Assembly (NCBI RefSeq): GCF_006345805.1
Contig: NW_021826520.1
Location: forward strand, 1 to 12,661
Length of the DNA stretch: 12,661 nt
Direction: 5' to 3'
Source of the DNA: Octopus sinensis
Lineage: Eukaryota
Within the stretch, counting starts at the first letter, position 1. Each line of letters starts with the position of its first letter. Positions 371 through 426 of this stretch are shown one piece after another. The notes below the pieces were generated by a model that was not told the DNA's origin, did not search any database, and saw only the letters and a list, made by a program, of their open reading frames with translations. The translations under genes were made by a program, and so were the position numbers.

Positions 371-426
371 TGCATTCTGATGATGTCTACCACTGCAACT
401 GCTAAACAGAAACGATCGTAAATGTA
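371..426 (+). ncRNA. Type I minimal hammerhead ribozyme motif with intact core
   Basis: Stem I tgcatt 371-376 / aatgta 421-426 (6 bp, one G-U); CUGAUGA 377-383; stem II tgt 384-386 / aca 406-408; GAAA 409-412; stem III with the palindrome acgatcgt 412-419; GUA cleavage triplet 418-420. Confidence 0.7.

What the first reader, a model, noticed from the sequence alone, without database searches (positions are those of the whole stretch)
371..426. Apparently intact minimal hammerhead ribozyme between two TA microsatellites
Seen: all core elements in order: 6-bp stem I, CUGAUGA, 3-bp stem II with a 19-nt loop, GAAA, a 2-bp stem III inside the 8-nt palindrome acgatcgt, and a GUA site. Established: minimal type I hammerheads with palindromic stem III occur in Penelope-like element termini and some satellites, and cleave as dimers. 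Inference: 364-527 is an orphan terminal fragment of a Penelope-like or non-autonomous retrozyme-like family, unrelated in sequence to the element at 3301-4851. If transcribed on the + strand it could cut its host RNA after 420. The U-A pair at the base of stem II is non-canonical.
Basis: partly seen in the sequence, partly recalled or inferred. Interest (0 to 1): 0.75.

Follow-up and report, generated by a model that had tools for sequence, protein, structure and literature searches.

The report
Lone, degenerate hammerhead-like RNA motif
The sequence really does spell out the core of a hammerhead self-cutting RNA, but one of its three stems is essentially missing and it has no partner copy, so it is most likely a dead relic or a coincidence, not a working ribozyme.

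Summary

The two core boxes alone are expected about once per window. Adding the helices makes the motif rare: about 1e-4 per window and about 19 per 2.5-Gb genome. Counting the 6-nt palindrome too, it falls to about 2e-6 per window and about 0.35 per genome.

"Intact" is not supported:
- Helix II is three weak pairs closing a 19-nt loop, with pair probability about 0.002.
- It has U-A where G10.1-C11.1 is highly conserved. That is how chance hits look.
- No Rfam hammerhead model matches, even at E<=10 on a 74-nt slice. This is a weak negative, because Rfam was also silent on the hammerhead-like motif in this window's Penelope-like element.
- The hammerhead fold is 9-11 kcal/mol worse than the alternatives.
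- Helix III cannot close in a monomer, and the window holds no second copy for a dimer.
- The 164-bp island is not tandem, not self-paired, and unlike the Penelope-like element at 3289-4863.

Copy number in the source genome could not be tested.

My estimates: decayed solitary relic of a type I hammerhead about 0.5, coincidence about 0.38, working dimer-dependent ribozyme about 0.12. Ordinary either way.

The parts
371..376 (+). Helix I, 5' strand (UGCAUU, positions 2.6-2.1)
   Evidence: Pairs with 421-426. There are 6 pairs, including the G372-U425 wobble and only one G-C. Pair probabilities in the monomer ensemble are 0.56-0.99.
377..383 (+). CUGAUGA box (C3 U4 G5 A6 U7 G8 A9)
   Evidence: Exact match, and the only CTGATGA on either strand of the window. 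In the predicted lowest-energy folds, part of this box is paired elsewhere.
384..408 (+). Helix II region: U384-A408, G385-C407, U386-A406 closing a 19-nt loop (387-405)
   Evidence: Stem II alone costs +2.4 kcal/mol, and its pair probabilities are 0.002-0.003 in monomer and dimer. U-A sits where G10.1-C11.1 is highly conserved. Reading on with two mismatches (C387.A405, C390.C402) gives 7 of 9 pairs around a 7-nt loop. Seven or more pairs out of nine occur in 9% of chance hits.
409..412 (+). GAAA box (G12 A13 A14 A15.1)
   Evidence: Exact match.
412..419 (+). Palindrome ACGAUCGU: helix III only between two molecules; in a monomer at most A412-U419 and C413-G418 around the tetraloop GAUC
   Evidence: In a modelled homodimer the 8-bp intermolecular helix has pair probability 0.76-0.81. 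A palindromic insert of at least 4 nt occurs in 2.3% of chance hits.
418..420 (+). GUA triplet (16.2, U16.1, A17); predicted cleavage after A420
   Evidence: The position follows from the hammerhead numbering rule (core definition in PMC7151607). No cleavage has been shown.
421..426 (+). Helix I, 3' strand (AAUGUA, positions 1.1-1.6)
364..527 (.). 164-bp non-repetitive island that holds the motif, between (AT)n 295-363 and (AT)n 528-554 followed by (AG)n 556-610
   Evidence: Tandem Repeats Finder. No similar sequence elsewhere in the window. The fold z-score is +0.70, so it is not unusually structured. No usable reading frame.

Best explanation
A solitary, degenerate type I hammerhead motif. 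It is most likely a decayed or off-consensus copy of the hammerheads carried in the terminal repeats of Penelope-like retroelements (PLEs) and their non-autonomous relatives, left as an orphan fragment in AT-rich, microsatellite-rich DNA.

Shown:
- The 13 core nucleotides, a 6-bp helix I and a palindromic helix III segment are present.
- Helix II is reduced to three weak pairs with U-A at 10.1/11.1.
- The window holds no second copy.

Inferred:
- The motif derives from a real ribozyme lineage.
- In its present state it does nothing. As a monomer, helix III cannot close and helix II does not form. Without a tandem partner no double hammerhead can assemble in cis. A transcript would instead adopt competing hairpins that tie up part of the CUGAUGA box.
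For: 1. The conjunction is rare by chance. It is 9.5e-5 per window at matched laxity and 1.8e-6 per window (0.35 per 2.5 Gb) when the palindromic insert is counted.
2. The features no descriptor forced are the class hallmarks. These are the exact CUGAUGA, a C-G pair at 15.2/16.2, and a palindromic loop 3 (hallmark list in PMC4209133). A palindrome with C..G ends is seen in 0.4% of chance hits.
3. Helix III as a single pair plus a palindromic tetraloop is the known architecture of dimer-dependent amphibian hammerheads (PMC7229834).
4. The same window holds a PLE fragment whose two arms carry a related relic..GAAACCGGUC... Hammerhead-bearing elements therefore populate this genome.
5. Penelope elements are abundant in coleoid cephalopods, and 235 Rfam Hammerhead_1 loci were reported in the giant squid. 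This applies only if the window is cephalopod, which is my recollection of its SINE (short interspersed repeat) sequences and was not tested.
6. PLEs insert preferentially into microsatellites, including (TA)n (PMC8557442). That fits an island between two (AT)n tracts.
7. Read with U384 as the extra nucleotide typical of PLE hammerheads, G385-C407 would be the G10.1-C11.1 pair of an 8-position helix with two mismatches. That would be a few mutations away from the PLE consensus. This reading is post hoc.
Against: - No relative of 364-527 was found anywhere I could look: the window, metagenome contigs and viral contigs. Membership of a repeat family is therefore unproven.
- There is no PLE reading frame next to it, and no similarity to the PLE at 3289-4863.
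- No Rfam hammerhead family matches, even at E<=10 on 74 nt.
- Helix II looks like a typical chance hit. A stem of exactly 3 bp occurs in 64% of chance hits, U-A at its base in 20%, and G-C in only 8%.
- (AT)n tracts are so common in this window that lying between two of them means little.
- My weighing of relic against chance depends on the unknown number of real hammerheads in this genome and on how helix II decay is modelled.
Confidence: 0.5

Rival explanations
1. Pure coincidence: an AT-rich stretch that happens to contain CUGAUGA and GAAA at a workable distance, with short complementary flanks. It has no ribozyme ancestry and no function.
For: - The core boxes alone are expected about once per window.
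- At matched laxity, about 19-121 full chance hits are expected per 2.5-Gb genome.
- Helix II has the typical chance profile: 3 bp, a long loop, and no G-C at its base.
- No Rfam hammerhead hit.
- The fold energy is no better than shuffles: z = -0.21 for the motif and +0.70 for the island.
- No second copy or relative was found.
- The field's own practice is to discard relaxed-descriptor hits that cannot be grouped into a family and to regard them as likely false positives (PMC4209133; PMC6155905).
Against: - For one 12.66-kb window the chance rate is only about 1e-4. With the 6-nt palindrome it is about 2e-6.
- That palindrome and the C15.2-G16.2 pair are the unforced hallmarks of real metazoan type I hammerheads.
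- Real hammerhead-bearing elements are present in the same window. The prior for a real relic is therefore not small compared with the chance rate.
Confidence: 0.38
2. One reading: a working minimal type I hammerhead that cleaves after A420 when two copies pair through the ACGAUCGU palindrome. These could be transcripts of this locus pairing in trans or members of a multi-copy family.
For: - The minimal catalytic core as defined in PMC7151607 is complete.
- The modelled homodimer forms the 8-bp helix III with probability about 0.8.
- Engineered hammerheads tolerate a helix II cut down to a single pair or a linker (PMC544870).
- A natural high-copy family, axolotl Amex2, has a U.U mismatch at the base of helix II.
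Against: - The engineered miniribozymes keep G10.1-C11.1. The nitrogen of G10.1, with the A9 phosphate, is a reported metal-binding site. I infer that a U at 10.1 cannot supply it.
- Helix II pair probability is about 0.002. The double-hammerhead fold is -8.6 kcal/mol against -19.8 for the best dimer fold and -13.8 for two separate monomers.
- Even well-formed PLE hammerheads showed no detectable cleavage as single motifs and only low activity as dimers.
- There is no tandem partner in 12.6 kb.
- There is no evidence of transcription.
Confidence: 0.12

Closest known systems
Minimal hammerheads of metazoan Penelope-like elements (Cervera & de la Pena 2014, PMC4209133)
   Same: Type I topology. 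No stable helix III, with a palindromic 15.2-16.2 / loop 3 segment that implies dimer action. Complete CUGAUGA and GAAA boxes. Mostly found as single dispersed motifs. The host elements favour microsatellite targets.
   Different: - Their helix II is long (6-8 bp) with a highly conserved G10.1-C11.1 and one unpaired nucleotide after A9. Here it is 3 weak pairs, U-A first, closing a 19-nt loop.
- Their helix I is 4-5 bp; here it is 6.
- They sit in the terminal repeats of a PLE or belong to a consensus family. Neither could be shown here.
Canonical type I hammerheads of satellite / non-LTR retrozyme repeats (newt and axolotl Amex1 and Amex2, mussel, coral; PMC7229834)
   Same: A 6-bp helix I. 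Helix III of one pair capped by a palindromic tetraloop, which forces dimer-dependent cleavage. A weak base of helix II is tolerated in one natural family (Amex2 has U.U).
   Different: - Those occur in tandem arrays of 170-400-bp units in hundreds to more than 100,000 copies.
- Their RNAs are highly self-paired.
- They usually show loop 1-loop 2 tertiary contacts.

Here there is one copy, no tandem arrangement, no unusual self-pairing and no Rfam match.
Hammerhead-like relic in the arms of the Penelope-like element in this same window (4803-4827 +, 3325-3349 -)
   Same: The same 3' half architecture: GAAAC, then a palindrome, then G-U-H. Both are degenerate and both are missed by Rfam.
   Different: - That motif keeps G10.1-C11.1 with a 2-bp helix II and a GAAA loop, but has U in place of G8 and a poor helix I.
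- The candidate has a perfect core and helix I but a defective helix II.
- There is no sequence similarity between the two flanks.
False-positive hammerhead-like motifs from relaxed descriptor searches
   Same: A single ungrouped hit, a relaxed helix II, no family and no covariation. Reviews regard such hits as mostly spurious (PMC6155905).
   Different: The core here is not relaxed at all. The palindromic helix III insert is uncommon among simulated chance hits, at 2.3%.

Membership tests
Hammerhead ribozyme (minimal catalytic definition) | Core C3 U4 G5 A6 N7 G8 A9 ... G12 A13 A14, an A15.1-U16.1 pair and an H17 cleavage site | tested here: met
   377-383 CUGAUGA, 409-412 GAAA, A412/U419, A420. 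Definition from PMC7151607.
Hammerhead ribozyme (minimal catalytic definition) | Three helices around the core | tested here: inconclusive
   Helix I has 6 pairs and is predicted to form. Helix II has 3 pairs with probability 0.002-0.003. Helix III is possible only between two molecules.
Hammerhead ribozyme (minimal catalytic definition) | Match to a curated covariance model (Rfam hammerhead families) | tested here: not met
   No hammerhead family at the gathering score, nor at E<=10 on 261 nt, on the whole window, or on 74 nt. This is a weak test for minimal variants, because the PLE arm motif is also missed.
Hammerhead ribozyme (minimal catalytic definition) | Site-specific self-cleavage | not testable with these tools
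   This needs an in vitro transcription and cleavage assay.
Penelope-like-element minimal hammerhead (PMC4209133) | G10.1-C11.1 pair highly conserved | tested here: not met
   U384-A408 occupies 10.1/11.1, and the G-C is the second pair. The hallmark is stated.
Penelope-like-element minimal hammerhead (PMC4209133) | Long helix II (6-8 bp) with one unpaired nucleotide between A9 and 10.1 | tested here: not met
   There are 3 contiguous pairs, or 7 of 9 only if two mismatches are allowed. U384 has an opposing A408, so it is not a lone bulge.
Penelope-like-element minimal hammerhead (PMC4209133) | Palindromic 15.2-16.2 and loop 3 | tested here: met
   CGAUCG within ACGAUCGU at 412-419. Seen in 2.3% of chance hits.
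Penelope-like-element minimal hammerhead (PMC4209133) | Lies in a terminal repeat of a PLE, or groups with many genomic copies into a consensus family with covariation | not testable with these tools
   The source genome is not searchable here. Within reach I found no PLE reading frame next to it, no similarity to the PLE at 3289-4863, and no hits in metagenome or viral contigs.
Metazoan non-LTR retrozyme / hammerhead satellite (PMC7229834) | Head-to-tail tandem repeats of a 170-400-bp unit, each with a hammerhead | tested here: not met
   Tandem Repeats Finder shows only microsatellites and a 13-nt duplication around the motif. There is one core-box match with helices in the window.
Metazoan non-LTR retrozyme / hammerhead satellite (PMC7229834) | Unit RNA highly self-paired | tested here: not met
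   364-527 folds at -12.1 kcal/mol with z = +0.70, and 152 of 200 shuffles fold at least as well.
C/D box snoRNA (raised by a weak Rfam SNORD5 alignment) | C box near the 5' end, D box CUGA near the 3' end, and a score above the family threshold | tested here: not met
   15.0 bits against a gathering score of 55, E = 1.4 on 74 nt. There is no CUGA D box in the 3' part.

The most novel reading that the evidence does not exclude
The motif belongs to an undescribed hammerhead family with U10.1-A11.1 and a long, imperfect helix II. The family would be transcribed from many dispersed loci, and its RNAs would pair in trans through the ACGAUCGU palindrome and cleave after the GUA triplet.
Probability: 0.08. 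Interest if true: 0.45.

Novelty: new member of a known kind. Interest (0 to 1): 0.22.

Why it matters
It matters little as it stands. Hammerheads in Penelope-like elements and retrozyme repeats are well documented across invertebrates. A single decayed copy adds one more fossil.

It would matter modestly if genome-wide copies showed a conserved family with a non-G-C 10.1/11.1 pair that still cleaves. That would widen the tolerated sequence space next to the hammerhead's A9/G10.1 metal site, and it would add a dispersed, trans-dimerising mode to the known tandem one.

The useful methodological point is that complete core boxes plus two good helices are not enough to call a hammerhead intact. 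The features that separate real from chance hits are the ones the search did not force: G10.1-C11.1, helix II length, the palindromic loop 3, and family covariation.

Tried and rejected
- **Rfam.** Scans at four scopes found no hammerhead family. A control slice over the PLE arm motif was also silent, so I treat the negative as weak for minimal variants.
- **C/D snoRNA.** A weak SNORD5 alignment (15 bits, E = 1.4) was rejected. There is no D box and the score is far below threshold.
- **Copies inside the window.** The repeat finder and a sensitive blastn of 364-527 against the masked window gave only low-complexity matches.
- **Copies elsewhere.** Exact 20-22-mers were scanned in metagenome and viral contigs with 0 hits. 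These collections are not expected to hold the source genome, so this says little.
- **Collecting genuine PLE hammerheads from relatives, to build a model.**
  - The PLE protein fragment found only two homologues, on roughly 1-kb Logan contigs.
  - The search for related loci gave two short metagenome loci and no viral loci.
  - My descriptor found no hammerhead in any of these loci.
  - No empirical model could therefore be built.
- **Exact-protein look-ups** for window ORFs, to reach the source contig, returned nothing on record.
- **A further large protein search** with the 46-aa stop-free translation of the island was not run. The PLE search had already shown the collection barely covers this genome, so a negative would be uninformative and the cost is high.
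- **Pfam** on the PLE fragments gave no hit. The PLE label rests on motifs I recognise, the inverted arms, and the homologue.
- **ARAGORN and the bacterial promoter/terminator scan** were uninformative.
- **Rescuing helix II.** I tried removing one unit of the CUGCA/ACUGC direct repeat in the loop. By inspection this gives no better helix.

Full report
**What is there**

The window reads like an invertebrate genome, and I think a coleoid cephalopod. It is AT-rich (38% G+C) and crowded with microsatellites, SINE-like (short interspersed) repeats and retroelement debris. The cephalopod assignment is my recollection of its SINE sequences and was not tested.

At 371-426 on the + strand the sequence is UGCAUU CUGAUGA UGU[19 nt]ACA GAAA CGAUCG UA AAUGUA.

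- The minimal catalytic core as defined in the literature is complete: C3U4G5A6N7G8A9, G12A13A14, the A15.1-U16.1 pair and H17 (PMC7151607).
- Helix I has 6 pairs, one a G-U wobble and only one G-C.
- Helix II is U384-A408, G385-C407 and U386-A406, closing a 19-nt loop.
- The "2-bp stem III" would leave a 2-nt loop and cannot form within one molecule. A monomer can make at most A412-U419 and C413-G418 around the tetraloop GAUC. The 8-bp helix ACGAUCGU needs two molecules.
- The flanks are (AT)n at 295-363 and 528-554, then (AG)n at 556-610.

**Is it more than chance?**

The two core boxes at a workable spacing are expected 1.07 times per window, and 2 are seen, so they mean nothing alone. I then simulated 3-12 million random contexts around a fixed CUGANGA box. 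I used the window's base composition and, separately, a first-order Markov model. The test asked for:

- helix I of at least 4-6 bp;
- helix II of at least 3 bp with a loop of 3-30 nt;
- GAAA;
- a palindromic or hairpin helix III insert;
- UH.

| Criteria met | Per 12.66-kb window | Per 2.5-Gb genome |
|---|---|---|
| Helix I of at least 4 bp | 6.1e-4 | about 121 |
| Helix I of at least 6 bp | 9.5e-5 | about 19 |
| Helix I of at least 6 bp plus palindromic insert of at least 4 nt | 1.8e-6 | about 0.35 |

Such a motif is therefore uncommon in any one window, while any large genome is expected to contain tens of them.

**What chance hits look like**

| Feature | Share of chance hits |
|---|---|
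| Helix II of exactly 3 bp | 64% |
| Helix II of 3 bp with a loop of at least 15 nt | 34% |
| U-A at 10.1/11.1 | 20% |
| G-C at 10.1/11.1 | 8% |
| Palindromic insert of at least 4 nt | 2.3% |
| Palindromic insert with C..G ends | 0.4% |

The candidate is split down the middle. Its helix II is what a chance hit looks like. Its 3' half (GAAAC, palindrome, GUA) is what a real metazoan type I hammerhead looks like.

**Comparison with the real thing**

Cervera and de la Pena (PMC4209133) list the features that emerged from Penelope-like element (PLE) hammerheads without being forced by their descriptor:

- consensus families with covariation;
- an extra nucleotide between A9 and 10.1;
- a highly conserved G10.1-C11.1;
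- a palindromic 15.2-16.2 / loop 3.

Their helix II is long (6-8 bp) and their helix I is 4-5 bp. The candidate meets only the palindrome criterion. Canonical metazoan type I hammerheads have a 6-bp helix I, a 4-bp helix II and a 1-2-bp helix III capped by a small palindromic loop. The axolotl Amex1 form has a single pair plus a palindromic tetraloop and needs a dimer. Amex2 tolerates a U.U mismatch at the base of helix II. Helices I and III of the candidate fit that class, and helix II does not.

Engineered ribozymes show that helix II can be cut to a single pair, but that pair is G10.1-C11.1. The nitrogen of G10.1, together with the A9 phosphate, is a reported metal-binding site. I infer that a U at 10.1 cannot supply it.

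Read differently, U384 could be the PLE-typical extra nucleotide and G385-C407 the G10.1-C11.1 pair of an 8-position helix with two mismatches, plus an extra A408. That is a few mutations from the PLE consensus. The reading is post hoc, and 7 or more of 9 pairs occur in 9% of chance hits.

**Models and folding**

No Rfam hammerhead family matches at four scopes:

- the gathering score;
- E<=10 on 261 nt;
- E<=10 on the whole window;
- E<=10 on a 74-nt slice.

This is a weak negative, because Rfam is equally silent on the hammerhead-like motif in the arms of the window's own PLE.

Thermodynamically the motif is unremarkable:

- The monomer's lowest-energy fold is -6.9 kcal/mol (z = -0.21 against shuffles), and it keeps helix I but pairs part of the CUGAUGA box elsewhere.
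- The hammerhead fold costs +2.2 kcal/mol, and helix II pairs have probability 0.003.
- In a modelled homodimer the 8-bp helix III forms with probability about 0.8.
- The double-hammerhead fold is -8.6 kcal/mol, against -19.8 for the best dimer fold and -13.8 for two separate monomers. Helix II stays at probability 0.002.

**Context**

The 164-bp island between the microsatellites gives no support for a retroelement origin.

- It has no copy elsewhere in the window and no similarity to the PLE at 3289-4863.
- It is not tandem, not unusually self-paired (z = +0.70), and carries no usable reading frame.
- Lying between two (AT)n tracts fits the microsatellite preference of PLE endonucleases (PMC8557442). 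But (AT)n tracts occur about seven times in this window, so this weighs little.
- The window contains no second hammerhead core with helices, so a cis double hammerhead is impossible.
- Well-formed single PLE hammerheads gave no detectable cleavage in vitro, and dimers gave only low activity.

**What could not be done**

The decisive test is copy number and covariation in the source genome, and it is out of reach. None of the searchable DNA collections holds this genome. Exact-word scans of metagenome and viral contigs found nothing. Exact-protein look-ups for window ORFs are not on record. The PLE protein fragment retrieved only two homologues and four short loci with no hammerhead in them. 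I therefore could not build an empirical model of this lineage's hammerheads.

**Weighing**

The odds of relic against coincidence do not depend on how many windows the scan read. They depend on two rates:

- how often real, descriptor-passing hammerhead copies look this odd in helix II;
- the chance rate for this feature set.

The chance rate is about 0.35 per genome with the palindrome counted, or about 19 without.

Cephalopod genomes are reported to be rich in Penelope elements, and the giant squid has 235 Rfam Hammerhead_1 loci. This very window also carries a PLE with a hammerhead-like relic in each arm. A few real-lineage copies per genome with a collapsed helix II is therefore plausible. 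That makes "decayed relic" at least as likely as "coincidence", though the estimate swings with how helix II decay is modelled.

| Reading | My estimate |
|---|---|
| Decayed or off-consensus solitary relic, inactive | about 0.50 |
| Coincidence | about 0.38 |
| Working dimer-dependent ribozyme | about 0.12 |

Under the first two readings, about 0.88 together, nothing is cut at this locus.

**Verdict**

"Apparently intact" is not. The relic-of-a-retroelement inference is plausible but untested. In the known landscape this is at most one more fossil of a well-described class, or a false positive of the kind relaxed hammerhead searches are known to produce. Interest is low.

Noticed in passing
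window 3289-4863: A 5'-truncated Penelope-like element. It has inverted arms of about 174 nt, 3289-3462 (-) and 4690-4863 (+), 92% alike. A decayed + strand reading frame (about 3500-4400) carries a reverse-transcriptase C-terminal motif and a GIY-YIG-like endonuclease motif (NLIYVITYSGCGHNYIRQT). A 63%-identical homologue exists on short Logan contigs. Pfam gives no hit, so the label rests on motifs I recognise and on the architecture.
   Followed up: partly
window 4803-4827 (+) and 3325-3349 (-): Both arms of that element carry a hammerhead-like relic, (C/A)UGAUUAG(C/U)GAAAGCGAAACCGGUC. It has G10.1-C11.1 with a 2-bp helix II and a GAAA loop, a CCGG palindrome and GUC. But U replaces the essential G8 in both arms, and helix I is poor. 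Rfam is silent.
   Followed up: partly
window 166-300: A MITE-like (small inverted-repeat) element. Its 40-nt arms, 166-205 and 261-300, are 93% complementary and 55 nt apart. It abuts the (AT)n tract that precedes the candidate.
   Followed up: no
window 658-763 / 7186-7291; 2655-2795 / 8502-8644; 1969-2006 / 9992-10029; 7418-7455 / 11658-11695: Several SINE-like repeat families in direct and inverted orientation, 82-92% alike. ARAGORN finds no intact tRNA in them.
   Followed up: no
window 9460-9990 (+) and 12035-12445 (-): Fragments that read like reverse transcriptase of non-LTR (LINE-type) retroelements. One contains AWIDYRKAFDSIPH (my reading of the DNA), and the other is a 136-aa C-terminal ORF. 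The exact ORF is not on record in the protein-position index.
   Followed up: no
window 6590-6810, 7298-7390, 7750-7835: Blocks of (GTT/GTC/ATC)-rich low-complexity sequence, with units up to 91% alike. They look like one array split by two SINE-like insertions (family D10).
   Followed up: no
window 8905-8955 and 9209-9450: Long trinucleotide microsatellite blocks: (AGT)n, then (AAT)n, (AAC)n and (GAT)n in series. They generate spurious long low-complexity ORFs on both strands.
   Followed up: no
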